A program made the position numbers and the translations under genes. Positions 7,620 to 55,817 of a DNA stretch of 64,000 bases are shown here, piece by piece; positions within the stretch are counted from its first letter, which is position 1; each line of letters opens with the position of its first letter. The stretch is taken from the IMG/VR virus record IMGVR_UViG_3300047499_000113, positions 124,001 through 188,000 of that record; one strand, written 5' to 3'. The notes beneath the pieces were generated by a model. It did not search any database. It was not told the origin of the DNA and worked only from the letters and a program-made list of their open reading frames with translations.

Positions 7620-7669
7620 ACCTGGAGCAGGTATTGGAGCCCTAGAGTGCCTATGTTGTAGTCTCTGCG

Positions 7670-8059
7670 GTGGACCTCGAGAAGAAACTCGAAGCCCTAC
7701 GCTCTCAGTTGGCCCAGGCCGCGCAGGCTGTCGTTGACGAGTGGGAGCAGGACGAAGAGGGCATGGACGAAGAACTTGGAGGCGGTGGCGTTTGCGACCG
7801 TGTGTCCGAGGCCATGCAAGGAGTGGTGGCCGACCAGCTCGAGGGAGTGGAATTCACCGAGGGCGGCCAACCCGGCGACGACCACGCATACTTCATCGTG
7901 TACGACGAGGACGAAGCATTCGCTGTCGACATCCCGCCAAGCGTCTACGAGACTGGCGGAGGCTACAGCTGGAAGAAGCGGCAGGACGCGCAGATCGAAC
8001 CGTCAGACGTCGTCTTCTCCGAGGTCGAGCGAGATTTGGTCGCTGACTGGGAAGACTAG
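7670..8059 (+). CDS. Hypothetical acidic protein
   Basis: 129-aa ORF filling the gap. TAGTCT -10-like box 5 nt before the GTG. Confidence 0.7.
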   Translation: MDLEKKLEALRSQLAQAAQAVVDEWEQDEEGMDEELGGGGVCDRVSEAMQGVVADQLEGVEFTEGGQPGDDHAYFIVYDEDEAFAVDIPPSVYETGGGYSWKKRQDAQIEPSDVVFSEVERDLVADWED

Positions 8060-8298
8060 GGATCGAAGCAGAGCTGCTTCATGTCCATGACGTTCTTCGC
8101 GTATTCACTGGCTTTCACCAAAGCCTTGCCCGAGTAGTAGTCTTCCCTCAACTGTTTGAGGGAACCGCCCGGGTTGGTGAACACGAAGAAAACGCGAGCC
8201 CCCTGCTTGCGCCTATTCTGCATGTGGCATCCAGCCAGCTTCAGATACGCGGCCAAGTAGATGTCGTGGGTCTCAAACTTCTCTTCAAGTTCCGGCAT
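8056..8298 (-). CDS. DUF5659-like small phage protein
   Basis: N-terminal FETHDIYLAAYLKLAG and RVFFVF match the TxDxYLAAYL pattern recalled for DUF5659. Confidence 0.65.
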   Translation of the reverse strand: MPELEEKFETHDIYLAAYLKLAGCHMQNRRKQGARVFFVFTNPGGSLKQLREDYYSGKALVKASEYAKNVMDMKQLCFDP

Positions 8299-8363
8299 TT
8301 GGGTCTCAGTATGCGTCTGCGTTTCCGCACACTCTACTGAGTGAAGGGTCCCAAATGCACAGA

Positions 8364-8392
8364 CGCCCTCGCTGGAGGAGACAGCGAGGGCG
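8364..8392 (-). terminator. Stem-loop downstream of the 8404-9672 gene (putative terminator)
   Basis: 11-bp perfect inverted repeat cgccctcgctg/cagcgagggcg just after the stop. Only a weak U-tract on the minus strand. Confidence 0.5.
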
Positions 8393-8403
8393 CCGGATGC
8401 CGC

Positions 8404-9672
8404 TTACAGCGTGTAAGCGGTGTGCCCGTCGTCTTCGGTGATGAAGACCGCCGGACCTGCAGCGTAACCGAGGCGAGCCGTCGCGCCCTCGTTCGCGCCG
8501 AAGGGCGACTGGTACGGGGTTTGGGCCGGGTAACCGGGCTGGAAGTAGGACGCCGAGAGCAGCGAGAGCTTGCCCTTGGCGAACGACAGGAGCACCGGAC
8601 CCGTCTCGATGAGCTGCGGCGCGATGGCGTTCTGGATGGCCGTCGCGAGCGCGAGGAACGCACCGCTCGGCGTCGAGGCCGAGTAGCCCGTCATGTTCGC
8701 GAAGGTCGACAGGGCGCCGATCTGCGAATACGAGATGTTGAAGGACAGCGTCTCCTCGGTCCAGCCGAGCGCCGTATCCACCAGCGCCGCCGGGTTGTAG
8801 ATGACAACCGACGTTGGCGAGATGTACTGGACGATCTGCCACGTGCCGTCGTTGGAGGCGTGAGTGCCGCCCGTCAGCACCAGGTAGTGCAGCGTCGAGT
8901 TGGCCGTCATGCCCGTGAGGCCCGTGATGACCGCGGTGCCGTTGGTGCCGACCGAAGCCACGGCTGCAGCGGCGCCAGTTTGGCCCGCGATGGCCGTGAA
9001 CTGGTAGACGCCGGCGTTGGCCGAGGTGCCGATGAGCGACGAGGTGCCCGCCGCACCATTCGCCACGGGCAGACCGGACAGAGCCGACGTCGAAACGCCG
9101 AGAGCTGTCGCGAGCGTGCCGCCGAGGTGCATGTACGCGGTCGGACCCGAGTTGAGCGCGCTGACGAAGGGCGCCGGAGGCTGCGGCGACACACCCAGCG
9201 GCGGCTGAGGAACGCCGGCGTACGTCGAGGAGAACGACGCCGTCACGCTGGCGCCTGGCGCCACCGTGTTGATGCCGATCTGGCCCGAGTGCGGATCCGT
9301 GGAACCCTGCACGATCGCCGTCAGCGACTGCGCGAGCCCGTTGGCCGCGAACGCCGCGTTGAGGGCCACGGCCAGCTGCGCCGCCGTGTACGTCCCCGTC
9401 GCGATCGTCATGGTGATCGTGGGACCGCCAGACTGCACGATGGCCGTCAGGGTGTTGTTGGCACCCGTGAGCGTCAGCGGAAACGTGGCGCTGTTGCCCG
9501 GGTTGCTCAGGAACGCGTACTGATTCAGTACGCTGGTGAGCGTGGTGTTCGAGGGGAACTCGAAGTACCGGCTCTGTCCCGGCGGTTGCGAGGAGAAGTT
9601 CCTCTGCGAGGTATTCTCCACGTCGTCGAGGTAGATCCTCGAGAGGTCTTGGCGGATGAGTCCAACGCGCAT
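8404..9672 (-). CDS. Probable virion structural protein (Ala/Thr/Gly-rich, beta-rich)
   Basis: 422 aa, strong GC3 codon bias, GAGGAG RBS, composition typical of tail/fibre proteins. Confidence 0.6.
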   Translation of the reverse strand: MRVGLIRQDLSRIYLDDVENTSQRNFSSQPPGQSRYFEFPSNTTLTSVLNQYAFLSNPGNSATFPLTLTGANNTLTAIVQSGGPTITMTIATGTYTAAQLAVALNAAFAANGLAQSLTAIVQGSTDPHSGQIGINTVAPGASVTASFSSTYAGVPQPPLGVSPQPPAPFVSALNSGPTAYMHLGGTLATALGVSTSALSGLPVANGAAGTSSLIGTSANAGVYQFTAIAGQTGAAAAVASVGTNGTAVITGLTGMTANSTLHYLVLTGGTHASNDGTWQIVQYISPTSVVIYNPAALVDTALGWTEETLSFNISYSQIGALSTFANMTGYSASTPSGAFLALATAIQNAIAPQLIETGPVLLSFAKGKLSLLSASYFQPGYPAQTPYQSPFGANEGATARLGYAAGPAVFITEDDGHTAYTL

Positions 9673-9716
9673 TGTCTTCTCCTCAAACTCCTGTGCTCAT
9701 CAAAGCGTGAAGATGC

Positions 9717-10316
9717 TCAGGTCACCGTGAACACGTTGCTGAGCTTCGAATTGCTCTGGACCTGAACCATCCAGCCCGCCACGACTGGCCCACCCGTCAC
9801 CAGTGTGTTCGGCAGGACGATCGATGCGGCTGCGATGGTGCCGCCGCCTCCAGTGATGGCGGTGTCCTTGATCGTCTGCTTGGCACCGCTGAGGTTCGTC
9901 AGGATGACGTAGGTGTGGTCCGGCGTGAGCGACAGGAACGTCGCACCCGAGGCAGGACCCGAAATCGTGGTGTCGCCCACCGGCGTGTTGTGCACAGCGC
10001 CCGTGATCGAAGGACCGGCCGAAAGTCCGCCAGCGTGGGTGAAGAAGCTGACGTAGCCTTTCGCGGCGAGCTTGGTGATCACTCCGTGCGGAAGCTGCGA
10101 CTGGAGCCTGACCTCGTCCGATGGAACGAGGTCGAGATAGCCCGGCACAGTCGGATCGATGGGGTTGACGTACGGGACATAGACCGCCTGCTTCGGCGTC
10201 TGCGCGTACGTGAGATCGGTCTCGAACTGGCCCGAGGTCCGGTCGATCTTGTCGAGCAGGATGTCTCGCGGCAGCACCTGCGAGTTGATGACCCTGACGT
10301 ATGCCGGCGTTTGCAT
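9717..10316 (-). CDS. Probable virion structural protein
   Basis: 199 aa, AGGAG RBS, Thr/Gly/Val-rich C-terminal half, putative late motif upstream. Confidence 0.6.
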   Translation of the reverse strand: MQTPAYVRVINSQVLPRDILLDKIDRTSGQFETDLTYAQTPKQAVYVPYVNPIDPTVPGYLDLVPSDEVRLQSQLPHGVITKLAAKGYVSFFTHAGGLSAGPSITGAVHNTPVGDTTISGPASGATFLSLTPDHTYVILTNLSGAKQTIKDTAITGGGGTIAAASIVLPNTLVTGGPVVAGWMVQVQSNSKLSNVFTVT

Positions 10317-10354
10317 GCCTGTCTCCTACTTGACTGAAGTCGATAAAAGCTGCA

Positions 10355-11098
10355 TCAGTGCATCGGGTCGTTTCGCTGGGAGCCGATGAAGTTGAAGGGA
10401 ACCGAGGCGCCATTGCCACGAACGAAGAGTTGCGACACAGCCGGGTAAGTCGTCACCAGGTTCACGAAATCGCTCGAAAGTGTGGGGACTTGGAACTCCG
10501 GGCCCGTAGGCTCGAATGCCACGTACAGGATCGCACCGCCGTTGTTCTGGATCTGGACGTTGTTGACCTGGCAAGGCAGCTGGATCTCGAGTGAGCCGGA
10601 AAGAGCCCCCGCGTTCGGAGCACTTCCGCTGAGAAGGATCGGTCGATTGGGTGCAATTGGATACGGCAAGATAAGCATCCCGGACTCGGCCGTATTGGTC
10701 GTGCCGTCCAGATTGACCTGCTGAACGCGAAGCCAGAACGGCGTGGAGTCGCTCACACCCACGGTCGAGAAAACCGTGTTGACTTTGCCGCCTGTCATAT
10801 AGTCGGTCGGAGCGAACCTGAATCGCGTCAGATACGGCTGTCGACTCTGACTGAACTGCTCAGAGTCGCCCATGATGTTCTGCATGCCCTGCACGCTCGG
10901 CGAGGCATAGCCACCAGACACGGGCATGTTCTGGAACGTCGTGTATGCCCCATCGAAATTGGCAGCAACCTGAAAGTTGTACGAGGCCGCGTTCGCACGC
11001 GACTCCGGACTGGTCGGGGTCGTGGCATTCGGGCCCGACGTCAAGTTGATGTCGACCAGATTCGGGCGACGCCTATAGAGCGACAGATACCGTGCCAT
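10355..11098 (-). CDS. Probable virion structural protein
   Basis: 247 aa, co-oriented in the structural cluster, putative late motif upstream. Confidence 0.55.
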   Translation of the reverse strand: MARYLSLYRRRPNLVDINLTSGPNATTPTSPESRANAASYNFQVAANFDGAYTTFQNMPVSGGYASPSVQGMQNIMGDSEQFSQSRQPYLTRFRFAPTDYMTGGKVNTVFSTVGVSDSTPFWLRVQQVNLDGTTNTAESGMLILPYPIAPNRPILLSGSAPNAGALSGSLEIQLPCQVNNVQIQNNGGAILYVAFEPTGPEFQVPTLSSDFVNLVTTYPAVSQLFVRGNGASVPFNFIGSQRNDPMH

Positions 11099-11123
11099 CG
11101 CTCGGATGAGCGATAAAAAGCCG

Positions 11124-12176
11124 CTATGGAAGGTCGTACACGGTCATCACGATATATTCGTACGGATTGCTGCCAGAGTTGATGCTCACGGTAGCTGGGG
11201 TGACCGTCGTCTGCTGCCACTGGAGCTGGATCGTATGGGAGGTTCCAGGCGTGTTGGCGATCACTTGGGCCCCGCTCAAGCTCTGCGATACACCAGCGTA
11301 ATCGGTCGTGCCAGTCGCGAGGATCTTCGTCTGCGTGGCCCCGTCGAGCGAGAATCCCACCGTTGCACCGTTCTGCACGGCGTCGGAATCGTACGAATAA
11401 TCGACTTGCACCAAAATACGGGTCCCGTTGAAAGTCTGAGTCGTCGTCATCCCGCCCAGGTCCGCCAGGGGTGCATGGGACGCGAGTTGGTAGTCGAACC
11501 CGGTCGCGACCGTGTAAACGGCAAGTACCCCGCCACCATTCGTACCTGCGGGACCAGTCGGACCTTGCGGACCAGTCGGACCTTGCGGCCCACCAGAAGG
11601 ACCAGTCGGACCTTGCGGCCCTACCGGTCCTGTAGCTCCTTGAGGTCCTGTAGCTCCATTTATGCCCGCAGGACCCGTTGCGCCTTGGGGTCCAGTCAAG
11701 CCATCGACGCCAGCCGGTCCAGTCGAACCCTGGGGGCCGGTAGTGCCATCAGCACCAGTCGGTCCCTGAGGGCCTGTTGCACTAGGACCGGTTGCTCCCG
11801 CAGGACCCACAGGACCTTGGGGGCCGATGGGACCCTGAGGACCGAAACCAGGAGGTCCCTGAGGACCGGGCGGGCCTATAGGACCAATGGGTCCAGGCGG
11901 GCCCGGAACGAACTGCACAGGCGCGGCCGAGCCCTGGGCCACCAGCTGAGCGGTGAAGGAATAGGTGAATTGTCCCGGGCTCTGATTGGCACCCGTCAGA
12001 ACGATGTTTGTGATGAACGTATTCGGCGCGTTGAGCTGCGAGTAGACTGCAGCCGCATTCCCAAACACGAAACCCATCGGATCGGGCAGCGCCTGATCCG
12101 ACACCACAATGATGCCGGCCGATATGACGGCCGGATTCGAACTAGGAGTCCGATTGGCGCTGATCGTGGTGCTCAC
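11124..12176 (-). CDS. Collagen-like protein (N-domain, ~100-aa Gly-X-Y segment, beta-rich C-domain)
   Basis: [16 protein letters not shown]...[10 protein letters not shown] between non-repetitive domains. Confidence 0.85.
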
Positions 12177-12206
12177 ATCAGCACGCCGCCATAAACAGCT
12201 TGCCGC

Positions 12207-12641: not shown

Positions 12642-12649
12642 GGGCTACT

Positions 12650-14963: not shown

Positions 14964-15003
14964 TTCGGTTTAGGCGGCCCATCAAAGTCTTGGGGCCGCC
15001 CAA

Positions 15004-16107
15004 TCAGGCGCCGAACTGCTTGGGATACGTCTTCTCGAGCATCTTGCGCATCTGGTCGCCCTCGGCGGCATAGAGAGCCTCGAGGAACTGCTGGGATGCG
15101 CCGTGCTTCTTGACGGCATCCATGCGGTCCTTGAGCTTGCCCGTGAAAGACCAATCCGCCGGGAAGTCCGGGTCGATGCGCCGGGCCATGCGGATCTTGG
15201 GCGGCAGCTTCGTGTCGATCTTGACGTCCTTGGACGTCGCCTTCACGGTCTTGCCGTTCTTGGCCGCGGCGCGCTCCGCACGGATGTTGCTTGTGTCGGC
15301 GACGCTCACGCCCTCGGCGTTGCCCATACCCCTCGAGGAATGGCGCACCTTGCCGACGACCGTGCCCTCGTTCTCGTCCCCGATCTCGACAGGGGCATTG
15401 CGGTTCATCCTGCTGGTCGTGCGGATGTTGATGCCCTCCTGCTCGGTCTCTTCGTACTGCTGACGAAGCGGAATGGCACCCGACCCGGCGATGTTGTCGA
15501 GCCGATGCTTGAGCTGCGATGCCCCAGCCGACGTCATGTCGATCTTGCCAGCATTGGCCGGCGTACGCAGGCGCGCGACAGGCGTGTAGTCCTGCTCCTC
15601 GATAGCGCCCGGATTGACGACCAGGCCGCTCGACTTCCAGCCGGTCTTCTTGGGCTGCGGCCGATTGGCGGAGGTGATCACGCGCGGTTGCGCCCGGATG
15701 TTGCGGCCACCGGGGTTGTGCATGTCGGCCCGAGCCTCGGGGCGCCTGTCGGACACGTGCATCACCGTGTCCTCGTCCATACTGTCGGTCTCCATCGAGT
15801 TGGCCTCGTGGCGCTGCACGCGTTGGAGATCCGTGTTCTTCGTCTGCGACTTGGCCACCTGGCGCGACGGCACCACCGCAGCCACGTGACCATCGATCTC
15901 GGCCTCGTCGTCGGTGAACCACCCTTGGTTGACGGACGACCGGAGGCTCGGGCCGATGGGGAGGTCCATCCCGGCGTATTTGAGCAGAGTCCCGTCGTAC
16001 TGGACCTGTTCACCCTTGTCGATGGTGACGCTGTGTGGGCCACCAAGACGAATCTTCATCTTGGCGTAAAGGGTGACGAAATCGTTGCGTTGCCAACGGA
16101 TGTCCAT
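15004..16107 (-). CDS. Hypothetical protein (probable late/virion protein)
   Basis: 367 aa with AAGGAG RBS and strong GC3 bias. Confidence 0.75.
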   Translation of the reverse strand: MDIRWQRNDFVTLYAKMKIRLGGPHSVTIDKGEQVQYDGTLLKYAGMDLPIGPSLRSSVNQGWFTDDEAEIDGHVAAVVPSRQVAKSQTKNTDLQRVQRHEANSMETDSMDEDTVMHVSDRRPEARADMHNPGGRNIRAQPRVITSANRPQPKKTGWKSSGLVVNPGAIEEQDYTPVARLRTPANAGKIDMTSAGASQLKHRLDNIAGSGAIPLRQQYEETEQEGINIRTTSRMNRNAPVEIGDENEGTVVGKVRHSSRGMGNAEGVSVADTSNIRAERAAAKNGKTVKATSKDVKIDTKLPPKIRMARRIDPDFPADWSFTGKLKDRMDAVKKHGASQQFLEALYAAEGDQMRKMLEKTYPKQFGA

Positions 16108-16170
16108 AGTGCAAACTCCTTCGGGCTTGCACTATTGTACCGAAAAATTGCGCCAGTTGTTATAAAAAGG

Positions 16171-16578
16171 CTACCGAATAACCCGGCGGGGCGGCGCGCT
16201 GGTCACCACGTCCTGGTCCGATTCCTGCGGCTTCTTCGTGCCTGGCTCGCGCCGAAGTTCCGTGATGAACTCATCGACATCATGCTTGAGGCTGCGCAGA
16301 GCGGGGACGAGCTTGTCGGGCTCCTCGGTCTTGCGCACGAACTTCATCGCTTCCTCGACGTCCTTGCCCTCGTCGGTGTCCCAAATCGACAGCTCGACGT
16401 CATCGGCGGCGATGGAAAGTATTTCTCGAGCGACGCGCTCGATGCGCTGCTGACGACACAGCGCCGAAGCGAGGAGCTTCAGGTCTTGGCGGACGAGGGT
16501 GTTGCTGGGCTGCTCACTGGCGTCGATCTTGGTTGCAATTCGACGCAGAATAGAGGCTACCTTGTCCGGCGCGAGCAT
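16171..16578 (-). CDS. Small probable internal-head protein with VAxILRxIA...PS...V..DL module
   Basis: Start chosen at ATG 16578 (MLAPDKVASILRRIA), just downstream of the putative late motif. Module shared with the 24274-25230 protein. Confidence 0.65.
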   Translation of the reverse strand: MLAPDKVASILRRIATKIDASEQPSNTLVRQDLKLLASALCRQQRIERVAREILSIAADDVELSIWDTDEGKDVEEAMKFVRKTEEPDKLVPALRSLKHDVDEFITELRREPGTKKPQESDQDVVTSAPPRRVIR

Positions 16579-16638
16579 ACTTCCCTGGGGCATAAAAACC
16601 TACGTAAATGTCTGTTCGAATAAGGTACGAGGCGGCCA

Positions 16639-18636: not shown

Positions 18637-19317
18637 GATCTTGCTCGGCTCCTTCGCATCCTCGATGAGACTATCGAGGTATGGAAGAACGTCCTTGTTG
18701 GGCGCGAGCTTGAAGGGACCGAGCCACTTCACCTCGGCATCGTCGAGCTTCTGGATCGACTCGTCCAGATTCAGAGGGTCGACCTTCGAAATGTCGAGGA
18801 ATCCGACCTCCGTAGGGTCGGCGAGCCGCTGCCGTTCCGGCAGGAACATATTTTCGGGACCGCTCGTGAAATGGATGGCCCGGAAGACGAACGTCCAGCG
18901 AGTATTCTTCGGCACCGGATAACCAGTGCGCATCTGGAATGCAACGCTGTGGCGCGAGATCGACTTGTCGAAATCGGGCATCAGCGCGAACGCGTAGCGC
19001 TTGTTCTTCTGCCGCAGGTGAAAGTGGAACCACTCGGTGGGCTTACCCTCGGCCCACATTTTGAGGTGCTCGACGATGTTGTCCGCATCCTTCATCAGGA
19101 AGACGGGTCGCATCTCGTAGTCGGTGTCCGACTTGACGTTGTGCTTGAACCAGAGACAAGCCTCGGCGGCTCCGCTCGGAAGCTGATCGAGGCCCTCCAT
19201 CAGCTCCGCGGTCCGCTCGGGCGGGATGAGCTGCATTGGGTCTCCCACCAGCAAGGGAACGTAGCTGATGAGGACGATGGACATCCCGGGCGACTTCTCG
19301 TCCTTGGGCTTACTCAC
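18622..19317 (-). CDS. Hypothetical protein
   Basis: 231 aa. TACTTT -10-like box 5 nt before the GTG. Confidence 0.7.
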   Translation of the reverse strand: MSKPKDEKSPGMSIVLISYVPLLVGDPMQLIPPERTAELMEGLDQLPSGAAEACLWFKHNVKSDTDYEMRPVFLMKDADNIVEHLKMWAEGKPTEWFHFHLRQKNKRYAFALMPDFDKSISRHSVAFQMRTGYPVPKNTRWTFVFRAIHFTSGPENMFLPERQRLADPTEVGFLDISKVDPLNLDESIQKLDDAEVKWLGPFKLAPNKDVLPYLDSLIEDAKEPSKISFKR

Positions 19318-19355
19318 CGCGGAAAGTACGCCGCCCGGGATCTGGACTTACGCGG

Positions 19356-21854: not shown

Positions 21855-22097
21855 GTGTTGTGGCGAATGGCTGCAACAGCCAAACGCTCAGTTGCCAAGA
21901 CGATCGCCTCGATAGAGAGGCAAGGCGGCCTGCTCCTTCCGTGTGGGTGCGTGATAGGCGTGGAACTTGGCGGCATGCGAAGGCTCGTGGAAACCGTTGG
22001 ACCAGAGCCTGTGGTAGAAATCTTCCGCGACATCCAGTGCGCTATCCATCCACGTCGAATTCGCAGACGCGCGAAATCACGTCCGGCTAGTCCGTAA
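21855..22097 (+). CDS. Hypothetical small protein
   Basis: 80-aa ORF with LPCGC...C motif; start uncertain. Confidence 0.5.
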   Translation: MLWRMAATAKRSVAKTIASIERQGGLLLPCGCVIGVELGGMRRLVETVGPEPVVEIFRDIQCAIHPRRIRRRAKSRPASP

Positions 22098-22128
22098 GCT
22101 TCAGGCGTGTTGATGTAATGATCTGAAG

Positions 22129-25243: not shown

Positions 25244-25255
25244 ATAAACAGCCTA
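25244..25255 (-). promoter_or_regulatory. Putative phage late-promoter motif TAGGCTGTTTAT (representative copy)
   Basis: Near-identical copies precede many virion genes (54643-54654, 55593-55604, 44162-44173, 12191-12202, 11113-11124 and others). Confidence 0.55.
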
Positions 25256-28090: not shown

Positions 28091-28131
28091 TTGTCCTGAT
28101 GAGGGATAGAAGCCCAAACGTAGGATCGAGA

Positions 28132-28584: not shown

Positions 28585-28614
28585 GTTGGGACCTATCCGG
28601 CGTACTCTTATCCC

Positions 28615-33808: not shown

Positions 33809-34021
33809 GGTTGCTCCAGTCTCCGTTGACGCTCAGGTCCGACTAAGTACGCATCTCTCCGAAACCGTGGCTTCAGTCCGGTTGCCCGCGAAGCCGTCCA
33901 ATTTCTTCAATCTGCTTTCCTGTCTTTCCCTTTCGTCTCCAAAGATGCTGTGGTTTGTCTGCGTATCCTTTATTTGTATCTCTGCAATTAGGAGCTTATC
34001 GCTCCAATTGCTGAAATTGCA

Positions 34022-35488: not shown

Positions 35489-35525
35489 GTGGGAGTCTCC
35501 TGCTTCTTGGTCTTCTATCAAGGTC

Positions 35526-38330
35526 CTAAAAATTGACTGACGCGATCCGACCCTTCCACTCGAGGAACCTGCGCTCCTGAGCGGTCAGCTCCCTACCAAC
35601 CTTCATCTTGCACGCAGCAATGAATGAGTTGGTTGTCGGGTAGCTGCTGGAAGGACCGGCTTGCATCACTGCTTTGTAGAGACTCGGCGGGTAGTTCCGG
35701 TCTCGGCATCGATCCTCGATCCATGAAAGGATTATCAGTTCACGAGGCGTCATGTTGGCGCGACGAATCGCTGCGATCCCGCCTTCGTGAACGGTCTTGT
35801 AAGCTTTCTCTGCCCACTGCACGAGACGCGGCGAAGAGCCGAACTTCTTGCGCAGAATGCGAGTGAAGTCCTGGCTCGAACGCACGAGACTGTCGTTGCC
35901 AGCCTCGAGATTGGCAGGCATTGGAGTCGCAGTGCCGACGTCCTCGGGTTTGGGAGCGAGCTTCTCCTCGAGCTTGTTGGTGATGCTGGTGAGCAATTGC
36001 TCTGTAATTTTATCCAGCATCCCATCAATTTTATCGGGCTTTGCCTTTGCCGGCTTGCTCGGCTCCTTGCCGCCCTGGTCCTGCTCGCCCTGACCGCCCT
36101 GACCTTGGTCCTGACCGCCCTGCTCTTCGGCTTGGTCAGCGCCGCCGCCTTGTTGCGACTCGTCCGCACCGCCCTGCTGGCCGCCCTGTCCGCCCTGGTC
36201 CTGACCGCCGAACACGTCGTCGAACGACTGCTCTTCCTGGCCCTGCTGGGCGCGGCGCTGCACGGAGGCGGCCTTCTTGATGCCGTCCATCTCCGGGATT
36301 TGCTGCCGCAGTTCGTAGACGTACTTGGACGCTTGCATCTGCGACGAGACGGCGCTCGCGTCCGGGTTCAGGATGTTGCGCCGCACAGCTCCACGAAACG
36401 CCGGGTTGCGGACCCACGACGCCTCGATGAACTGGTTGGAGTTGGGAACTGAAACGTGACCGATGACTTCAGCGAGGATTTGCTCTCGCCCAGTCTCGTC
36501 GATGAACGTTGAGAGCTTGCCATCGTAGAGGACGCACGGGCAAAGCTGCGCATCGTCCGCGGCCACGTTGCCGCACTTCGTGCAAGCAGTGAACAGCGAA
36601 ATGCAATTCGAAACTCCGACGCCGTTGGCGACGTAAGAGTGATCCCCGTCGACTTGGAGGTCATATACGAATCCCTGGTACTCGGAACGGACGACCTTCT
36701 TGATCTCCGAGTAGACGTACTTGTCGGTGATCCAGCGGCTGTTGCGACCCGCTTGAGTAGACTTGATCCCGGCGAGCGCAGACCGCACCTTGACCGACGG
36801 AACTCGGACCACGTCCGAATTGCGAAGTTTGATCTGGTAGTCCACGCCGGCCGCACCATGGAGCAGCCTTGTCCCCGGTCTCTCCACGGCAGAGAAGGTC
36901 GGGACTATCCCGCAGCGAGCTGCAAGCTGCATGTACTGATGGGCGAGCTTCAGGTTGCGGGTGCTGAGGAAGACATTCTTTGTCCCACGCTTGCTCGTCG
37001 AAACGCACCCATCGGAGTCGATGAGGCCCGACAAGAACGCCATTTGGTGTTCCCGCGGCCAGCTCATGATAGTCTTGCCGATAAGTTTTTCGGACGAGTT
37101 CCTGCCGGAAACGTGGGAGTCCACGAGCCTGCGGAAGGCTCGAGAAGTGTTCGTAATATAAGCCGCACCTCGGCGACTCGAACGGGACGTGCTTTGGGGC
37201 TTGATGGGCGCACCTCCGACAGCCATATGATATTCGCGCGCAGCCCAAGCTACTTGGTCGAGTGAGCGAATAGCATCTTCGACGATCTCGGGGTGAGACT
37301 CGTCCAGGCAGAACCCAACGCCAACCGTGGAGTCGTGCGTGTACTCGAACTTCCAGCCATCCCCAACCCAAAGCCCGAGAAGACGAGCTTCGGTAAGGGA
37401 AACGTCCGCTTCCAGGGTGTCCTGGGAGATGGGGAAAGCGAGGAAGTCCCCGACGCGCGCAGTCCCGGCTTCGGCGTAGTCGAACGCGTAGTCCTTCTCC
37501 ACAACACGAGGCTTGGATTTGTGGCCGCAGCCGCTGCGAGTTCGGACCATATCCAACGTCTCGCGGCGGACGATGTAGTAGTTGTGATTATCGGTCGAGG
37601 TGACAGGAGGAAGCCCGACCGCCTTGATAGTCTGAACATTCCAACGATTCTCGCGGATCTGCAGGTTGTCGACGCGCCGGGAATTCCCCTTCTGCGTCAT
37701 GACCTCCATACCCGGGCGGACGTCCTCGATGTTTATCGGACTGCCGTCCGACAGGTAAACGAGGGTTCCAGGGACATGGCAGCCCATGCTCAGGCCCGTG
37801 ATGGCGCCCGAGAGGATGTCCGACACGAGCTGGTTGTGCTTGCGGTCGGTCGCGACGAGGATGTCGATGTAGCAGCTGTTGCCGAGATCACGCGCGATGG
37901 CGTCGACGATGAAGCCCTTCGACAGCTCGGGGAGCTGGATGTGCTCGAGGTAGTTGTGCGCGCCGATGAAGGTCCGGTAGGTCGCCAGAAGGAGCGAACG
38001 CTCCCACGCATCACCGTTGTTGTTGATGATGTTGTGGCACTCGGGCTTGATGCGGAACTCAGGCCACCGGACGTCGATCTGGCAGCCGCGGTTCATCAGC
38101 CGGCCGGTCTTGACACCCTTAGGGGCGTAGGTGTCGACCGAAGCGACGATGGTCGCATGCGACAGCAGGTACTGCTTCGGGTCGCACTTGCGCAGGATCG
38201 TCTTGGCCGTGCGGTGCACGAAGTCCTTCGGAACTGCGCCCTCGTGCTGGTCGCGCAGCTCTTCCATCCACTCGTCGAAGGCGATGTTCCGACGAGAAAC
38301 GATGGCGTGGGCGTACCTTCTCTTGGCCAT
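35526..38330 (-). CDS. Prohead maturation protease interrupted by an intein
   Basis: NNNGDAW...TFIG..NYLEH...KG.IVDA...ILVATD...LSMG|C, then a CTKCG zinc motif and FIEASWVRNPAF. Position fits the head operon. Confidence 0.8.
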   Translation of the reverse strand: MAKRRYAHAIVSRRNIAFDEWMEELRDQHEGAVPKDFVHRTAKTILRKCDPKQYLLSHATIVASVDTYAPKGVKTGRLMNRGCQIDVRWPEFRIKPECHNIINNNGDAWERSLLLATYRTFIGAHNYLEHIQLPELSKGFIVDAIARDLGNSCYIDILVATDRKHNQLVSDILSGAITGLSMGCHVPGTLVYLSDGSPINIEDVRPGMEVMTQKGNSRRVDNLQIRENRWNVQTIKAVGLPPVTSTDNHNYYIVRRETLDMVRTRSGCGHKSKPRVVEKDYAFDYAEAGTARVGDFLAFPISQDTLEADVSLTEARLLGLWVGDGWKFEYTHDSTVGVGFCLDESHPEIVEDAIRSLDQVAWAAREYHMAVGGAPIKPQSTSRSSRRGAAYITNTSRAFRRLVDSHVSGRNSSEKLIGKTIMSWPREHQMAFLSGLIDSDGCVSTSKRGTKNVFLSTRNLKLAHQYMQLAARCGIVPTFSAVERPGTRLLHGAAGVDYQIKLRNSDVVRVPSVKVRSALAGIKSTQAGRNSRWITDKYVYSEIKKVVRSEYQGFVYDLQVDGDHSYVANGVGVSNCISLFTACTKCGNVAADDAQLCPCVLYDGKLSTFIDETGREQILAEVIGHVSVPNSNQFIEASWVRNPAFRGAVRRNILNPDASAVSSQMQASKYVYELRQQIPEMDGIKKAASVQRRAQQGQEEQSFDDVFGGQDQGGQGGQQGGADESQQGGGADQAEEQGGQDQGQGGQGEQDQGGKEPSKPAKAKPDKIDGMLDKITEQLLTSITNKLEEKLAPKPEDVGTATPMPANLEAGNDSLVRSSQDFTRILRKKFGSSPRLVQWAEKAYKTVHEGGIAAIRRANMTPRELIILSWIEDRCRDRNYPPSLYKAVMQAGPSSSYPTTNSFIAACKMKVGRELTAQERRFLEWKGRIASVNF
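36606..37781 (-). mobile_element. Intein with LAGLIDADG homing endonuclease (392 aa)
   Basis: Starts CHVPGTLVYLSDG. Block B TSTDNHNYY. LAGLIDADG motifs LLGLWVGDG and FLSGLIDSDG. Ends VYDLQVDGDHSYVANGVGVSN, followed by +1 Cys. Confidence 0.93.
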
Positions 38331-38407
38331 AGGTCCTCGCCCAAGCTGGGCTATAGAAGCTCTGGCACGTTACCGTAAATTGGCCTCCCTCGAGCGTACC
38401 AAGTGGT

Positions 38408-40823: not shown

Positions 40824-40875
40824 GGCTCCCTCGCATTGGGCGCCTAGCCCGGAGAAGATTAGGCGCCGAGTGGCT

Positions 40876-41424: not shown

Positions 41425-41475
41425 GTCTATCTCCGGGTCTGTTCTACAGAACTATGAAAACTGTATCAACCCAAC

Positions 41476-44139: not shown

Positions 44140-44177
44140 GCAAGCTCTGCCTAGACGGCTTATGGAAAGCCTACCGA

Positions 44178-46757: not shown

Positions 46758-48707
46758 TCAGCGGGGTCTTGTCCGTGGGACACGTCGCATGGACGCTCCG
46801 CCTCCGTGCATGCGGTCCCGCATCCGGTGATAGTGATGATACCCGTACGTCGGCACCCGTGACGAAGGCGCCGGGGCGAGGATCGTTCCGGCCGTCAGGA
46901 GGGACGGGTTGTCCTTGACATACTCGTTGGCAAGTGCGACCGAACGGACGAGGGCGTCCGACTGGTCGTCGTGCTTGCCCGCGATCTTTGGCGCCTCGAC
47001 GATGATGATGTTCTTTCCACCCGACGTCGACTGCAGCTCAAGCAGCTCGGAGATGAGCGGGGAATGCTTGCTGCCGTCCCACAGTTTGGTCTCGTCAGCC
47101 TGAGGAATCGGGTAGTCGTACAAGGCGAGCTGTTTGTAGTACATGCTCATCTTGAACCCGTGATACATCTGCGACGAGTCCATAGTCGAGAAGTTGCGCT
47201 GCTCGAATTGGATGAGATGGCGCTTGTGCAGCACTTGTTCGAAGATGGGGCCCGCCCACTGGTCGAACACTCCCTTGATGATGTAGAACCTTCTCGAGAG
47301 TGCGAAGAACCAATCAGCAATGGCTTCGATGTCGAGCCTCGCCTGATCCTGGAGAGTCATGGCGTACGGCACCATCGGCGACGGCAAGTGAGGATTGCAC
47401 TCCGCCCATTTCTTCTTCGGATACCACACCTCGTGGTAAGCCAGCTCTATCCTGCCCGAGTTGACACGAGTCAGAGCGATGGCGGTGCCGTCGCCCGAGA
47501 GACCGAAGTCGACGCCCGCCCAGTGGGGCTCGCGCGGAATGCCAACTTGCTTGGGCCGCAGGTCGGGAACGATGCAAGCCTGAAGGTCCCGGGCGTCCTC
47601 GATGAAACCGCGGACGCGGTCCGAGAACTGAGCGCCGTGCTCCGTCATGAAGCCAGCGGGATCCTTGGCGTACTCCTCCTCGTAGTAGCTCTTGGGAAGG
47701 TCCGGGCGGATTTCCCACGTCGGCGCCTGGATCATGAGCATGTTGCGCGACTCGGGTCCGCCCGTCAGGCTCATCTCGTACTGCTTGTAGAAGAAACCCT
47801 CTCGCGCGTCGGGCGACGAGATGAGAATCATGCGGCCTTCGGTATCACCGACCGCCTTGCGGGTCTTCTTGTCCTTCTTGGCGAACTGCGCGATGGAGGG
47901 CTTGATGGCCTTGTACACGCGTTCGGCCGAGCTTTTGCCGTTGTCGACGAAGAATGCGATCTCGTCGAGAATTGCGCAAATGATACCACGACCGCGGAGA
48001 CCCTTGGCGATGGATGATTTGAACGTCGCCGTAATGGTGCCCTTGCCCTCAGGGCCGAACTTCTTGCGGTCATTTTCCGTTCGGAAGCGCAAGAACGTTT
48101 GCGTGTCGTGCGCCACTGACGACTTGAAGTAGTCGATGGCCTGGATGTGGCCCTGGATGTCGTTGTAGACGATCGACGCCTGCTCTTTGTCGTTCGCGAT
48201 GTCGAGGATACGAATTTCGGAGCCCGGCGGCATGCCGTAGTAAGCCTGCGGGTGCCCGCGCTTGAGGAGCTTGTACAGCTCGTACGCCGCGAAGACGGCC
48301 GAGAGCGCGCTCTTACCAGAACGGCGGCCGAGGATGAGGACCAGCTCGCGGCGCTCTCTCCCGTCCTGCTCGCGGATGTTGCATCGCTTGTTGTCGAACA
48401 GGTACTGAAGGTATTCCTTCTCGGTCAGTTCGAGCTTGATCGCGTCGCCGTACCTGTCGGTGATCTTGATGCACTTCTCGGTGTCGTCGAGCGGGATGTT
48501 GTAGTACAGCTTGATGATGAAGCGCTGCGCGGGGAAAAGCCCGTCCGGGAAGAGCTTGAACCGGTCGATGAATTCGAGAATATTGAGGAACTCAACATCG
48601 CCTTCAGTGTCCGACTTCTGCTGACTGCCTTGCTTCCGCTTCCTGGCGATGAAGCCAGACACCTCTGCAGTCAGCTCGCTCTTGAATACAGGCTCGCGCG
48701 TCGGCAT
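46758..48707 (-). CDS. terL: Terminase large subunit
   Basis: Walker A LGRRSGKS, Walker B ILDEIAFF, motif III ISSP, RNase H-like GVDFG...HDDQSDA. Confidence 0.93.
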   Translation of the reverse strand: MPTREPVFKSELTAEVSGFIARKRKQGSQQKSDTEGDVEFLNILEFIDRFKLFPDGLFPAQRFIIKLYYNIPLDDTEKCIKITDRYGDAIKLELTEKEYLQYLFDNKRCNIREQDGRERRELVLILGRRSGKSALSAVFAAYELYKLLKRGHPQAYYGMPPGSEIRILDIANDKEQASIVYNDIQGHIQAIDYFKSSVAHDTQTFLRFRTENDRKKFGPEGKGTITATFKSSIAKGLRGRGIICAILDEIAFFVDNGKSSAERVYKAIKPSIAQFAKKDKKTRKAVGDTEGRMILISSPDAREGFFYKQYEMSLTGGPESRNMLMIQAPTWEIRPDLPKSYYEEEYAKDPAGFMTEHGAQFSDRVRGFIEDARDLQACIVPDLRPKQVGIPREPHWAGVDFGLSGDGTAIALTRVNSGRIELAYHEVWYPKKKWAECNPHLPSPMVPYAMTLQDQARLDIEAIADWFFALSRRFYIIKGVFDQWAGPIFEQVLHKRHLIQFEQRNFSTMDSSQMYHGFKMSMYYKQLALYDYPIPQADETKLWDGSKHSPLISELLELQSTSGGKNIIIVEAPKIAGKHDDQSDALVRSVALANEYVKDNPSLLTAGTILAPAPSSRVPTYGYHHYHRMRDRMHGGGASMRRVPRTRPR

Positions 48708-48709
48708 GA

Positions 48710-49309: not shown

Positions 49310-49323
49310 ACAGGAACTTTACT

Positions 49324-51369: not shown

Positions 51370-51378
51370 GACCGTTGA

Positions 51379-54338: not shown

Positions 54339-54347
54339 GGAGACCTC

Positions 54348-54617
54348 TCAGCCCTTCACAGGACCGTTGTCGTCGTCGACCAGGCGCTCGATGTAGAAGC
54401 CCTTGTCGTCCTTGCCCAGGTGCCAAAAGTCCTGTTGCGACAAGTGCACCAATTGGTCTTCGGCGACGAGTTGGAAACCGGCCAGCTGACCGGCATTGGC
54501 GATGCGAATCCTGCCGACAGGCGCCGCGCTCGCCTTCCGCACCACGGGCTTCGAGGTGAAGAAGTCGTCGATTGAGCTGGAGGAGAAACGCAGGTCTTCG
54601 ATCTTAGGCGCAGGCAT
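54348..54617 (-). CDS. Small head-region protein
   Basis: 89 aa. TAGGCTGTTCAT motif upstream. Confidence 0.7.
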   Translation of the reverse strand: MPAPKIEDLRFSSSSIDDFFTSKPVVRKASAAPVGRIRIANAGQLAGFQLVAEDQLVHLSQQDFWHLGKDDKGFYIERLVDDDNGPVKG

Positions 54618-54668
54618 GTCTCACCCTTTGCAAGGCATGCCAATGAACAGCCTAGGAGTGTCCGAGGG

Positions 54669-55577
54669 TCAGCTGACGACCAACTGCACCTGGACGTTGA
54701 CCGGAGTAACCGTGGGGTTCGGGGACGAGATTTGAAGTATCTCGAAGTAGGTTCCCGGCACCTGAGGTATCCCCGCCGACCAGAGCGAGAGAGTGACGAT
54801 AGTCGACTGGCCCCCAGCCAGGCCGCTGACGGTGGGCGGGTTGAAGGCGAGCCAGGGGCTGTTGTTCTGCACCTTGGCAACCGTCGCGTTCAGGATAGAC
54901 GACGTCGGCCCGGTGTTCGTGATCGTCAGCTGCTGCGATCCGCTGTTCGCGGCCGTCAGCAGGGTCCAGGTGAGCTGGATGACGGCAGGCTGGGCCGAGA
55001 TGACCGGCGGCGGAAGCACCGTGACGTTGACAGTCAGCGGAATGACCGTCGGCGTGGCGCGATTATCCTGCAGGTTGACCGTGCCGACGTAAGGCGCCTG
55101 CTGGGCGACCAGAATCGTCGGATCCAGAATGACAGAAAACTGTCCCGTCTGGTTCTGACCAATCCCCGGGATAGTCACCGGGGAGGCCGAAAGCCAAGGC
55201 ACTGTTGGGGTCGCCGTGGCAGTCATAAAAGACCCGAAGGCGCCGGCGTTGATGATATTGACCGCCCCAACGAGAGACGCCGCGTCGCCTTGCGTGACAG
55301 TGATATTGAACGATGTCTGCTGACCCGCGACGAGCGCCAGAAGAGGCGCGAGCTGCTGCTGCAGCTGCGTCATTGAACCGGCCATCTCTTGGACGACGTC
55401 GCCGGGGATCGGAACGTCGACGCCATCCGTGTAGCGGCCAAACGGCGTCTGGATGTCGCAGACGTAGTATTGCTGCGAAGCTCCTTGAACGTTGCTGGCC
55501 GAAACAGTCCAGTACCAAGTCCCGCCAACCGAGATCTTGCTGAACCGGAAGCCGCCCGAGGCTACGTTGGAGCCCAT
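54669..55577 (-). CDS. Virion surface protein with two BACON/Ig-like repeats
   Basis: Two units I.N.G...S.......PWL...P..v.Gl..gQ....tv......Y...l.i. TAGGCTTCCCAT motif upstream. Confidence 0.65.
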   Translation of the reverse strand: MGSNVASGGFRFSKISVGGTWYWTVSASNVQGASQQYYVCDIQTPFGRYTDGVDVPIPGDVVQEMAGSMTQLQQQLAPLLALVAGQQTSFNITVTQGDAASLVGAVNIINAGAFGSFMTATATPTVPWLSASPVTIPGIGQNQTGQFSVILDPTILVAQQAPYVGTVNLQDNRATPTVIPLTVNVTVLPPPVISAQPAVIQLTWTLLTAANSGSQQLTITNTGPTSSILNATVAKVQNNSPWLAFNPPTVSGLAGGQSTIVTLSLWSAGIPQVPGTYFEILQISSPNPTVTPVNVQVQLVVS

Positions 55578-55601
55578 CGCCAAGGAGCGACCATGGGAAG
55601 C

Positions 55602-55817
55602 CTACCAAATGTCTCGGCCGCTCATCGACGGAGCGTCGAACACCTCGGAATAGAAGCGCTCGAGGTCGTGAAGAAACCCTCGAGTGGCGCGGTTGAGAGA
55701 TCGCCGGTATCGGCGGTTGGCGATCCTTTTGTCTTGGCGTTTGGAAAGGATGCTGTAGTTCACCCAGCGACGAGCCCGTTTGCAGCTGTACTGCACAGCA
55801 GGTAGGACGGTGATCAT
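55602..55817 (-). CDS. Small Arg-rich protein
   Basis: 71 aa, AGGAGG RBS, SKRQDKRIANRRYRR, ends RDIW. Confidence 0.65.
   Translation of the reverse strand: MITVLPAVQYSCKRARRWVNYSILSKRQDKRIANRRYRRSLNRATRGFLHDLERFYSEVFDAPSMSGRDIW

What the first reader, a model, noticed from the sequence alone, without database searches (positions are those of the whole stretch)
7625..55604. Putative phage late promoter TAGGCYNYYYAT upstream of virion genes, including isolated cargo genes
Seen on the minus strand, mostly ~13-30 nt upstream of starts: TAGGCTGTTTAT (25230), TAGGCTGTTCAT (54617), TAGGCTTCCCAT (55577), TAGGCTTTCCAT (44139), CAAGCTGTTTAT (12176), GCGGCTTTTTAT (11098), GCAGCTTTTAT (10316), TAGGTTTTTAT (16578), TAGCCTTTTTAT (16107, further upstream), GGGCTTCTAT (28090), GAGCTTCTAT (38330), TAGGGCTCCAAT (7619). 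It marks structural genes and several module-bearing genes (16578, 25230, 28090, 44139), and was not noticed before the VMES-tag genes. Inference: a single-box late promoter read by a phage factor, which independently supports the virion-cargo class.
Basis: partly seen in the sequence, partly recalled or inferred. Interest (0 to 1): 0.65.

Follow-up and report, generated by a model that had tools for sequence, protein, structure and literature searches.

The report
Conserved single-box promoter-like motif, huge phage
A 12-base, strand-specific DNA signal (TAG, then a pyrimidine-rich stretch, then AT) sits just upstream of many structural-region genes of an uncultured huge phage and is kept in place in relatives of very different base composition, so it is most likely a phage-specific (probably late) promoter, though no transcript data could be obtained to prove it.

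Summary
The strict consensus has 4 matches where 0.09 are expected. A blind MEME-like search of all intergenic DNA in the 240-kb contig returns the same motif as its top hit (log-likelihood 93 against 48±3 in shuffles).

In fixed register the motif reads T-11 A-10 G-9 R-8 N Y T Y Y N A-1 T0. It is strand-specific: 8 sites co-oriented with the downstream gene, 0 anti-oriented, 1.05 expected after shuffles that keep the TAG stop codons. It ends 11-29 nt before start codons. Only 4 of 11 window TAG sites reuse an upstream stop codon.

The motif is kept at the same distance before orthologous genes in two relatives with 43% GC (9 of 25 pairs against 1.7 expected). It is also enriched in the 485-kb relative LR745208.

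It heads the operon holding terminase and portal, and precedes tail and tail-fibre genes. A second, two-box leaderless-type class sits before helicase and transglycosylase-domain genes.

The best reading is a class-specific single-box promoter. "Late" and "read by the 57793-58566 protein" remain inferences: that protein is two sigma region-4 domains with no region 2. No sigma region 2 domain and no RNA polymerase gene was recognised. The virion-cargo inference is not independently supported.

The parts
7633..7644 (-). L-motif site TAGGGCTCCAAT, 13 nt before the start of gene 7230-7619. It lies back to back with the plus-strand site in a 50-nt divergent spacer.
   Evidence: The G2 orthologue has GTGACCTTCTAT at 14 nt.
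7643..7654 (+). L-motif site TAGAGTGCCTAT, 15 nt before the start of gene 7670-8059 (+).
10343..10354 (-). L-motif variant TGCAGCTTTTAT, 26 nt before the start of gene 9717-10316.
   Evidence: Conserved in place: G1 TGAAACTTTTAT at 27 nt and G2 TGAAGCTTTTAT at 26 nt.
11113..11124 (-). L-motif variant GCGGCTTTTTAT, 14 nt before the start of gene 10355-11098.
   Evidence: Relatives have TCCGCYTTTTGT at 16-18 nt.
12191..12202 (-). Weak L-motif variant CAAGCTGTTTAT, 14 nt before the GTG start of gene 11124-12176.
   Evidence: Conservation in relatives was not tested.
16162..16173 (-). L-motif site TAGCCTTTTTAT, 54 nt before gene 15004-16107. Its TAG is the stop codon of gene 16171-16578. The site follows a weak hairpin, so it may instead be a terminator tail.
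16592..16603 (-). L-motif variant GTAGGTTTTTAT, 13 nt before gene 16171-16578. It abuts the -35-like box of the divergent two-box promoter of gene 16639 (+).
25244..25255 (-). L-motif site TAGGCTGTTTAT, 13 nt before gene 24274-25230. Its TAG is the stop codon of gene 25253-25789.
   Evidence: The G1 orthologue has TAACCCTTTGAT at 29 nt.
28106..28117 (-). L-motif variant TTGGGCTTCTAT, 15 nt before gene 27800-28090, in a 41-nt divergent spacer.
33987..33998 (-). Possible weak variant TAAGCTCCTAAT at the 5' end of a roughly 180-nt conserved leader. The leader precedes gene 33110-33808 and the major head protein gene 32191-33081.
   Evidence: The aligned positions in G1 and G2 only partly fit the motif.
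35517..35528 (-). L-motif site TAGGACCTTGAT, 28 nt before gene 34022-35488. Its TAG is the stop codon of gene 35526-38330.
   Evidence: Conserved in place: G1 TAGGTTTCTCAT at 32 nt and G2 TAAATTTCTCAT at 29 nt.
38353..38364 (-). L-motif variant CAGAGCTTCTAT, 22 nt before gene 35526-38330 (934 aa, contains an intein). It lies in a 77-nt divergent spacer shared with the two-box promoter of gene 38408 (+).
40835..40846 (-). L-motif site TAGGCGCCCAAT, 11 nt before gene 40110-40823.
41454..41465 (-). L-motif variant TACAGTTTTCAT, 29 nt before gene 40876-41424.
   Evidence: Conserved in place: G1 and G2 have TGAACCTTTCAT at 31-32 nt.
44162..44173 (-). L-motif site TAGGCTTTCCAT, 22 nt before the 887-aa gene 41476-44139, which follows the portal gene.
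   Evidence: The G2 orthologue has a TAGACTTTCAT-type element about 22 nt upstream.
54643..54654 (-). L-motif site TAGGCTGTTCAT, 25 nt before gene 54348-54617. It heads the tightly packed run of co-directional genes that contains the large terminase (46758-48707) and the portal (44178-45935).
   Evidence: This is the best conserved site: G1 TAGGCCCTTCAT at 27 nt and G2 TAAGCCCTTCAT at 25 nt.
55593..55604 (-). L-motif site TAGGCTTCCCAT, 15 nt before gene 54669-55577. Its TAG is the stop codon of a weakly supported small ORF, 55602-55817.
57349..57360 (-). Uncertain variant TCGAGCTTCCAT, upstream of the nucleoside-hydrolase-like gene. It would lie inside the coding sequence if the longer ORF 56689-57591 is the real gene.
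57793..58566 (-). Candidate trans factor, unproven. A 257-aa protein with two tandem sigma-70 region-4 HTH domains and no region 2. It is 76-81% identical in the 43%-GC relatives, and both recognition helices are invariant.
59771..60382 (-). Candidate trans factor for the rival reading. A 203-aa KOW/NusG-like 'transcription antiterminator' located next to the clamp-loader gene.
   Evidence: The same gene cassette is present in LR745208.

Best explanation
The motif is the core of a phage-specific, single-box promoter class. It is about 12 bp long: TAG(R) at -11 to -8, a C/T-rich centre and AT at the 3' end. It lies on the coding strand 11-30 nt before the first codon.

The class drives the structural-region genes of this huge phage: the operon with terminase and portal, tail and tail-fibre genes, and many unknown small genes interspersed with them. 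It is therefore probably the late (or middle/late) class.

A trans factor conserved in the clade, rather than the host's ordinary two-box recognition, would read it. The factor is not identified. Candidates are the tandem sigma-4 protein (57793-58566), a divergent 510-aa protein with a weak sigma-4 match (contig 206982-208514), or something encoded on the unsequenced ~44% of the genome.

Shown: existence, enrichment, strandedness, position, conservation in place, and partition from a second promoter-like class.
For: Statistics:
- The strict consensus occurs 4 times against 0.09 expected.
- It is the top motif in a blind EM search, log-likelihood 93.4 against 48 +/- 2.7.
- It occurs 8 times co-oriented and 0 times anti-oriented, against 1.05 in shuffles that retain the stop codons.
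- 14 of 34 genome-wide pattern hits fall in co-oriented upstream non-coding DNA.

Position:
- The 3' end lies 11-29 nt before the start codon, and weak Shine-Dalgarno-like runs lie between the two.
- In the divergent spacers 7620-7669, 16579-16638, 28091-28131 and 38331-38407 (41-77 nt) it is the only conserved element for the minus-strand gene. It lies back to back with the other gene's promoter-like element.

Conservation:
- Of 25 orthologue pairs with two relatives of 43% GC (own genome 60%), 9 keep a PWM hit of at least 5 bits within +/-4 nt of the same distance. Shuffles give 1.7 +/- 1.2, with a maximum of 6 in 1000.
- An independent EM run on relative G1 gives TaAaccTTTnaT as the top motif.
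- In 50 kb of LR745208 the pattern falls 9 times co-oriented upstream, 2 times in other non-coding DNA and 11 times in coding DNA, with 7% non-coding.

Gene sets:
- Motif sites precede the terminase/portal operon, a 1616-aa tail protein and a collagen-like tail fibre.
- The two-box leaderless-type class precedes a transglycosylase-domain protein and a helicase, among others. A looser match of the same kind (deviating -35-like box) precedes Tpt1/KptA.
- 26 of the 27 sites I curated lie in the first 181 kb. Only one lies in the 56-kb DNA-metabolism end.

Canonical sigma-70 promoters are not enriched, so they do not explain expression of these genes.
Against:
- The motif is degenerate: about 16 strict sites and about 11 variants. 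A PWM trained on it is not specific genome-wide.
- In the AT-rich relatives the crude pattern is not enriched. Score-only comparison of orthologues is weak (Mann-Whitney p = 0.15 and 0.02). G1 and G2 are related to each other, so the 25 pairs are not independent.
- The major-capsid operon has only a weak variant far upstream.
- No sigma region 2 domain and no RNA polymerase gene was recognised in the contig or in the whole 485-kb relative.
- The named candidate has no sigma-2 domain.
- Gene starts come from my own codon-usage caller.
Confidence: 0.6

Rival explanations
1. The motif is an ops-like loading or pause site. [quoted passage not shown]
For: - The phage encodes a KOW-containing protein that matches the PHROG 'transcription antiterminator' family (phrog_6386, E 3.3e-7; KOW at 22.2 bits against a 22.3 cut-off).
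- That gene is conserved, next to the clamp loader, in LR745208.
- The motif is 12 nt long, strand-specific, and sits before long co-directional gene runs.
- Several sites have GG(C)TAG, which recalls the GGTAG core of ops (the ops sequence is from my own knowledge, see PMC2871177).
Against: - An ops site needs a promoter upstream. In four divergent spacers of 41-77 nt there is no room for one outside the neighbour's coding sequence.
- No sigma-70-type promoters are enriched.
- There are about 27 sites, often only a gene apart (44162, 41454, 40835), which is denser than ops usage.
- The sequence differs from GGCGGTAGnnTG.
Confidence: 0.12
2. The motif is an operator for a DNA-binding regulator, for example the tandem HTH protein 57793-58566 contacting two major grooves one helical turn apart. 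The regulator would activate or repress promoters whose core elements are too weak to be seen, so the motif itself would not be the core promoter.
For: - The two best-conserved blocks (TAGR and AT) are about 10 bp apart, which is the spacing two tandem HTH domains could reach.
- The HTH recognition helices are invariant across genomes of 60% and 43% GC.
Against: - Activator sites usually lie further upstream of a recognisable core promoter. Here there are only 11-15 nt to the start codon at many sites.
- The motif is asymmetric and strictly oriented with the gene, as core promoter elements are.
- The same protein could equally serve the -35-like box of the two-box class.
Confidence: 0.12
3. 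The motif acts at the RNA level, as an endonucleolytic processing site or a translational operator in polycistronic mRNAs.
For: It is strand-specific and lies upstream of start codons, often between co-directional genes.
Against: - The distance to the start codon varies from 11 to 64 nt, and the motif does not overlap the ribosome-binding region.
- It is present at the heads of divergent units, where a promoter is required.
- No structure is associated with it and Rfam gives no match.
Confidence: 0.08
4. The motif is a compositional artefact: TAG stop codons followed by T-rich intergenic DNA in a GC-rich genome.
For: - 4 of the 11 window TAG sites do reuse an upstream stop codon.
- TAG-containing words are generally enriched in non-coding DNA.
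Against: - Shuffles that keep stop codons and dinucleotides give 1.05 against 8 observed, and none occur on the opposite strand.
- 7 of the 11 TAG sites are not stop codons.
- Variants without TAG are conserved in place in relatives.
- The TGA-N7-AT control shows no enrichment.
Confidence: 0.03

Closest known systems
Phage T4 late promoters (TATAAATA) read by host RNA polymerase with gp55, gp33 and the gp45 sliding clamp (PMC2988020)
   Same: - It is a single short box with no -35 element, placed in front of structural genes.
- The phage brings no RNA polymerase of its own that I could recognise.
- Transcription-related genes (the tandem sigma-4 protein and the KOW protein) sit beside the clamp loader.
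- Jumbo phages without their own polymerase are reported to use minimal sigma-like HTH proteins and gp33-like HTH co-activators (PMC7824862).
   Different: - The sequence is unrelated: TAGR-N6-AT, pyrimidine-rich, not TATAAATA.
- No gp55-like or sigma region-2 protein was recognised.
- The candidate protein has two sigma-4 domains, unlike either gp55 or gp33.
- Clamp dependence is untested.
Late promoters of jumbo phage non-virion RNA polymerases: AR9 A(-11)ACA-6N-T(A/G)(+1) and phiKZ T(-3)ATG(+1) (PMC7598289, PMC9209446)
   Same: - It has the same 4 + 6N + 2 layout in 12 nt as the AR9 late promoter.
- It is a single short element lying close to where the mRNA must begin: the Shine-Dalgarno-like runs start only a few nt after the motif.
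   Different: - No multisubunit polymerase genes were found in the contig or in the 485-kb relative.
- The bases differ.
- The portal and capsid genes relate this phage to the phage G / Tunturi_5 side, not to the phiKZ or AR9 groups.
- The transcription start site is unknown.
RfaH ops element, a NusG-paralogue recruitment site (PMC2871177, PMC7593976)
   Same: - It is a 12-nt, strand-specific element ahead of long operons.
- A KOW/NusG-like protein is encoded.
   Different: - ops lies inside a transcribed leader, downstream of a promoter. Here the motif is the only element in very short divergent spacers.
- It is used far more densely than ops.
- The sequence differs.
Sigma-70/ECF-type two-box promoters
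   Same: The phage has such a class as well: cGTA(A/G)nn-N16-(G)TAnnnn, ending 4-7 nt before the start codon. The existence of this class shows that host-type holoenzyme recognition is used for other genes.
   Different: The finding's motif has no second box and no room for one. Canonical TTGACA/TATAAT matches are at chance level.

Membership tests
T4-type late transcription (gp55/gp33/gp45) | Single -10-like box without a -35 element | tested here: met
   No second conserved block is present. The motif ends 11-15 nt before the start codon at 8 sites.
T4-type late transcription (gp55/gp33/gp45) | Box sequence TATAAATA | tested here: not met
   The consensus is TAGRNYTYYNAT.
T4-type late transcription (gp55/gp33/gp45) | Phage-encoded gp55-like (sigma region 2-like) factor | tested here: inconclusive
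   PF04542 gives one sub-threshold hit in the contig, inside a tail gene on the opposite strand. It gives no hit in LR745208, G1 or G2. gp55 itself may escape this model, and the contig is only 56% complete.
T4-type late transcription (gp55/gp33/gp45) | Dependence on the sliding clamp and on replication | not testable with these tools
   A clamp loader is encoded at 60348-61769. Functional coupling needs an experiment.
AR9/phiKZ non-virion RNA polymerase promoters | Short single element abutting the transcription start (AR9: 4 nt + 6N + 2 nt) | tested here: inconclusive
   The geometry matches, but the start site is unknown.
AR9/phiKZ non-virion RNA polymerase promoters | Phage-encoded split beta/beta' RNA polymerase subunits | tested here: not met
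   PF00562 and PF00623 give no hit in the contig. PF00562 gives no hit in the whole of LR745208. PHROG scans of 8 of the large proteins outside the window and 17 window proteins of 300 aa or more show no polymerase. Caveat: such subunits are very divergent.
RfaH/ops-type antitermination | Specialised NusG paralogue encoded | tested here: inconclusive
   KOW scores 22.2 bits against a 22.3 cut-off. phrog_6386 'transcription antiterminator' matches at E 3.3e-7. The NGN domain was not shown.
RfaH/ops-type antitermination | Element lies in a transcribed leader, downstream of a promoter | tested here: not met
   At four divergent spacers of 41-77 nt no other promoter-like element is present for the minus-strand gene.
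Sigma-70-type two-box promoter | -35 and -10 hexamers 16-18 nt apart | tested here: not met
   The number of consensus matches equals that in shuffles. There is no second block beside the motif.

The most novel reading that the evidence does not exclude
Promoter recognition in this clade of huge phages may work without any sigma region-2 domain. In one version, a tandem sigma-4 protein (two HTH domains one helical turn apart) docks on the 12-bp TAGR-N6-AT box and hands host core polymerase to it. In the other, an unrecognised phage polymerase uses an AR9-like 4+6N+2 promoter that abuts the start site. Either way this class would run alongside a separate leaderless two-box class for non-structural genes.
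Probability: 0.12. Interest if true: 0.7.

Novelty: new member of a known kind. Interest (0 to 1): 0.4.

Why it matters
Almost nothing is known about how uncultured huge phages of the phage G / Tunturi_5 side programme transcription, and most of their genes are unannotated. A conserved, class-specific promoter signal offers three things:

- A sequence-only way to sort hundreds of unknown genes into expression classes.
- A way to delimit operons.
- A concrete DNA target for testing the clade's odd transcription proteins (the tandem sigma-4 protein and the KOW protein).

The signal survives a 17-point shift in GC content between relatives whose capsid proteins are 92% identical. That shows strong selection on the signal and presumably on its reader. 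It does not by itself show which proteins are packaged in the virion.

Tried and rejected
- Megablast of 12 kb against isolated phages: no match.
- Tunturi_5, the only cultured relative (portal 38% identical): too distant for orthologue footprints. Its first 50 kb lack the motif and show other upstream words.
- ZOOPS-EM PWMs drift to low-information versions (CTCGAG-like). Genome-wide they hit coding DNA as often as upstream DNA. A strict false-discovery-limited iteration kept only 10 sites. I therefore relied on register-fixed patterns, orientation, shuffles and orthologue conservation.
- The crude pattern is not enriched in the AT-rich relatives G1 and G2.
- Sigma-70 consensus and intrinsic-terminator scans: at chance level.
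- Rfam: nothing.
- Fold of the tandem sigma-4 protein: only sigma region-4 matches in PDB, none with E <= 0.001.
- Fold of the 510-aa protein with a weak sigma-4 match: pLDDT 43, so it was not searched. The profile against PDB was marginal (sigma-B region 4, E 0.015).
- exceeded the size limit and was resent smaller. Script 72 printed nothing.
- Complex prediction was not used, because no protein-protein claim is made.

Full report
**Context.** The window is bases 124001-188000 of a 240,015-bp linear viral contig with 60% GC. CheckV estimates it at 56% complete. Most genes lie on the minus strand.

Family scans identify the following:
- a portal (44178-45935) and a large terminase (46758-48707);
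- a major head protein (32191-33081; phrog_2522, E 2.7e-46);
- a clamp loader, an exonuclease and a primase;
- outside the window, a baseplate wedge protein, a tail protein and collagen-like tail fibres.

By portal protein, the nearest named phages are:
- the uncultured 485-kb phage LR745208 (47% identity);
- Tunturiibacter phage Tunturi_5 (38%);
- Bacillus phage G (28%).

Two IMG/VR contigs are closer: G1 (193 kb) and G2 (85 kb). Their terminase is about 64% identical, their portal 80% and their capsid protein 92%, yet they have only 43% GC. Gene coordinates come from my own codon-usage caller and are approximate at the starts.

- The strict consensus TAGGCYNYYYAT has four matches, all on the minus strand, against 0.09 expected.
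The best motif was TaGagctTTtaT, with log-likelihood 93.4. Twelve dinucleotide-preserving shuffles gave 48.1 +/- 2.7, maximum 51.6.

The consensus is T-11 A-10 G-9 R-8 N Y T Y Y N A-1 T0.

The motif survives it.
- I took unidirectional intergenic regions with the upstream stop codon included. TAGNNNYYYNAT occurs 8 times on the gene's strand and 0 times on the other strand. Shuffles give 1.05, with a maximum of 5 in 200.
- TAG-N7-AT occurs 15 times against 1, with 4.7 expected.
- Only 4 of the 11 window sites with TAG use it as the neighbour's stop codon.
- Genome-wide, TA[GA]-N7-AT with at least four of five central pyrimidines falls 14 times in co-oriented upstream non-coding DNA, 3 times in other non-coding DNA and 17 times in coding DNA. 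Only 7.4% of the contig is non-coding. A TGA-N7-AT control shows no such bias.

**Conservation.** I built a PWM from this genome's sites only and scored the upstream regions of orthologues in G1 and G2.
- In 9 of 25 pairs a hit of at least 5 bits lies within 4 nt of the same distance from the start codon. Shuffled upstream regions give 1.7 +/- 1.2 and never more than 6 in 1000 trials.
- Hits on the gene's strand outnumber those on the opposite strand 11 to 2.
- Examples:

| Gene (start) | This genome | G1 | G2 |
|---|---|---|---|
| 54617 | TAGGCTGTTCAT, 25 nt | TAGGCCCTTCAT, 27 nt | TAAGCCCTTCAT, 25 nt |
| 10316 | TGCAGCTTTTAT, 26 nt | TGAAACTTTTAT, 27 nt | TGAAGCTTTTAT, 26 nt |
| 41424 | TACAGTTTTCAT, 29 nt | TGAACCTTTCAT, 31-32 nt | TGAACCTTTCAT, 31-32 nt |
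| 35488 | TAGGACCTTGAT, 28 nt | TAGGTTTCTCAT, 32 nt | TAAATTTCTCAT, 29 nt |

- The flanks differ freely between the genomes.
- A blind EM run on G1 alone again gives TaAaccTTTnaT as the top motif, with modest significance (61 against 41-56).
- In 50 kb of LR745208 (54.5% GC, capsid 75% identical) the pattern falls 9 times co-oriented upstream, 2 times in other non-coding DNA and 11 times in coding DNA, with 7% non-coding. 'TAGCCT' recurs before genes there.
- Tunturi_5 does not share the motif in its first 50 kb.

Caveats: G1 and G2 are related to each other. Score-only tests are weak (p = 0.15 and 0.02). The crude pattern is not enriched in the AT-rich genomes.

**What it marks.**
- Sites at 55593 and 54643 head a tightly packed run of co-directional genes that contains the terminase and the portal. 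Further sites follow at 44162, 41454 and 40835.
- Outside the window, sites precede a 1616-aa tail protein and a collagen-like tail fibre.
- Of the 27 sites I curated, 26 lie in the first 181 kb and one lies in the 56-kb DNA-metabolism end.
- The major-capsid operon is an exception. It has only a weak variant (33987-33998) at the head of a conserved 180-nt leader.

**A second class gives contrast.** Nine genes of the contig carry cGTA(A/G)nn-N16-(G)TAnnnn ending 4-7 nt before the start codon. This is the geometry of a two-box promoter that produces leaderless mRNA.
- Shuffles give 1.7, maximum 4. G2 has 6 such genes against 0.8 expected.
- In the window these genes are 16639 (+; transglycosylase-domain protein), 18622-19317, 22129 (+), 28615 (+; helicase) and 38408 (+).
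- A looser match with a deviating -35-like box precedes 25253-25789 (Tpt1/KptA).
- In the 60-nt and 77-nt divergent spacers at 16579-16638 and 38331-38407, the two classes lie back to back.
- At 7620-7669, two copies of the finding's motif lie back to back, one on each strand.
- In these very short spacers the motif is the only candidate promoter for the minus-strand gene. This is the main argument for initiation rather than a downstream signal.
- Canonical sigma-70 promoters and intrinsic terminators are at chance level.

**Who reads it?** Unknown.
- The 57793-58566 protein has two tandem sigma-70 region-4 HTH domains (Pfam E 4.9e-15) and no region 2.
- Its model (pLDDT 72; residues 55-234 confident) matches only region-4 domains of ECF sigma factors in PDB, none with E <= 0.001.
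- It is 76-81% identical in the 43%-GC relatives, and both recognition helices are invariant. That fits a conserved DNA target, but the target could be either motif class.
- Next to it lie an exonuclease gene, then a KOW/NusG-like 'antiterminator' (59771-60382), then the clamp loader. A similar cassette (clamp loader, KOW protein, tandem sigma-4 protein) is found in LR745208.
- No Sigma70_r2 match passes threshold in the contig, and none appears in the whole of LR745208, G1 or G2.
- No RNA polymerase domain is found. The T7-type model has no positive control in that search.
- A conserved 510-aa protein (contig 206982-208514) has a weak region-4 match. It could not be folded with confidence.

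**Mechanism.** I commit to a class-specific single-box promoter (confidence 0.6). Its layout, TAGR-6N-AT, equals that of the AR9 late promoter AACA-6N-T(A/G), where the last base is +1 (PMC7598289). Weak Shine-Dalgarno-like runs begin a few bases after the motif at the closest sites. This suggests, but does not show, that the RNA starts at or just after the AT. A T4-like arrangement, with the start site 6-7 nt further on, would leave 5-8-nt leaders. That cannot be excluded in a phage that appears to use leaderless mRNAs.

The rivals are:
- an ops-like site for the KOW protein (0.12);
- an operator for the tandem HTH protein (0.12);
- an RNA-level signal (0.08);
- a compositional artefact (0.03).

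**Novelty and limits.** Single-box, class-specific phage promoters are a known kind (T4, AR9, phiKZ). This sequence, this clade and the lack of a recognisable reader are new, so I rate it a new member of a known kind. 'Late' is an inference from gene content. The 'virion-cargo' reading of genes 16578, 25230, 28090 and 44139 is not supported by co-regulation alone.

Noticed in passing
window 16604-16631 (+), 19323-19351 (-), 22094-22121 (+), 28581-28608 (+), 38375-38402 (+): A second promoter-like class: cGTA(A/G)nn-N16-(G)TAnnnn, ending 4-7 nt before the start codon (leaderless-type geometry). Nine genes in the contig carry it against 1.7 in shuffles. It is also enriched in relative G2 (6 against 0.8). 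It precedes a transglycosylase-domain protein, a helicase and unknown genes.
   Followed up: partly
window 2-5935 (-), continuing to contig 123048; also contig 118345-123048 (-): Two giant ORFs of 2295 and 1567 aa. Their codon-position GC is atypical (high at positions 1 and 2), and the one short stretch I read by eye has a Gly-X-Y collagen-like repeat. They are probably fibres, and they share short matches with the Tunturi_5 tail fibre.
   Followed up: partly
window 35526-38330 (-): The 934-aa protein carries a LAGLIDADG homing endonuclease and Hint/intein domains. The host protein's function is unknown (phrog_2774).
   Followed up: no
window 33863-33903 (-): A conserved hairpin lies in the roughly 180-nt leader upstream of the 232-aa gene and the major head protein gene. 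5 of its 15 pairs show compensatory changes across three genomes. Rfam gives no match.
   Followed up: partly
window 32191-33081 (-) compared with G1 39932-40819 and G2 16568-17458: The major head protein is 91-92% identical to relatives whose genomes have 43% GC, against 60% here. This is a large compositional shift at small protein distance.
   Followed up: no
window 58567-58660 (-), 8299-8330 (-); L005 about 2640-2726: A third upstream word, ACGCATAC(T). Four of its ten genomic 7-mer occurrences lie within 60 nt upstream of genes. It is conserved upstream of the tandem sigma-4 gene in relative G2. It may mark another expression class.
   Followed up: no
L019:8700-8830 (contig about 208700-208830, outside the window): Seven copies of a TCCACAG-type repeat (DnaA-box-like or iteron-like) lie in the 379-nt spacer upstream of the 510-aa gene with a weak sigma-4 match. 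This may be a replication origin.
   Followed up: no
window 38408-38929 (+) and ORF 55874-56329 (-): Both products end in ...VMES. The first has the two-box promoter-like element, not the finding's motif.
   Followed up: no
products of window genes 16171-16578, 24274-25230, 27800-28090, 41476-44139, 40876-41424: These products share a short amphipathic motif of the type (L/I)xxIAxRVA, at the N- or C-terminus. A strict regular expression finds it in only a few proteins.
   Followed up: partly
L022 (Tunturi_5, 1-50000): This cultured jumbo phage has its own recurrent upstream words: GGGTATTAGC, and GTAGGTTGA 3-6 nt before ATG. This suggests lineage-specific promoters, some of them leaderless-type.
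   Followed up: no
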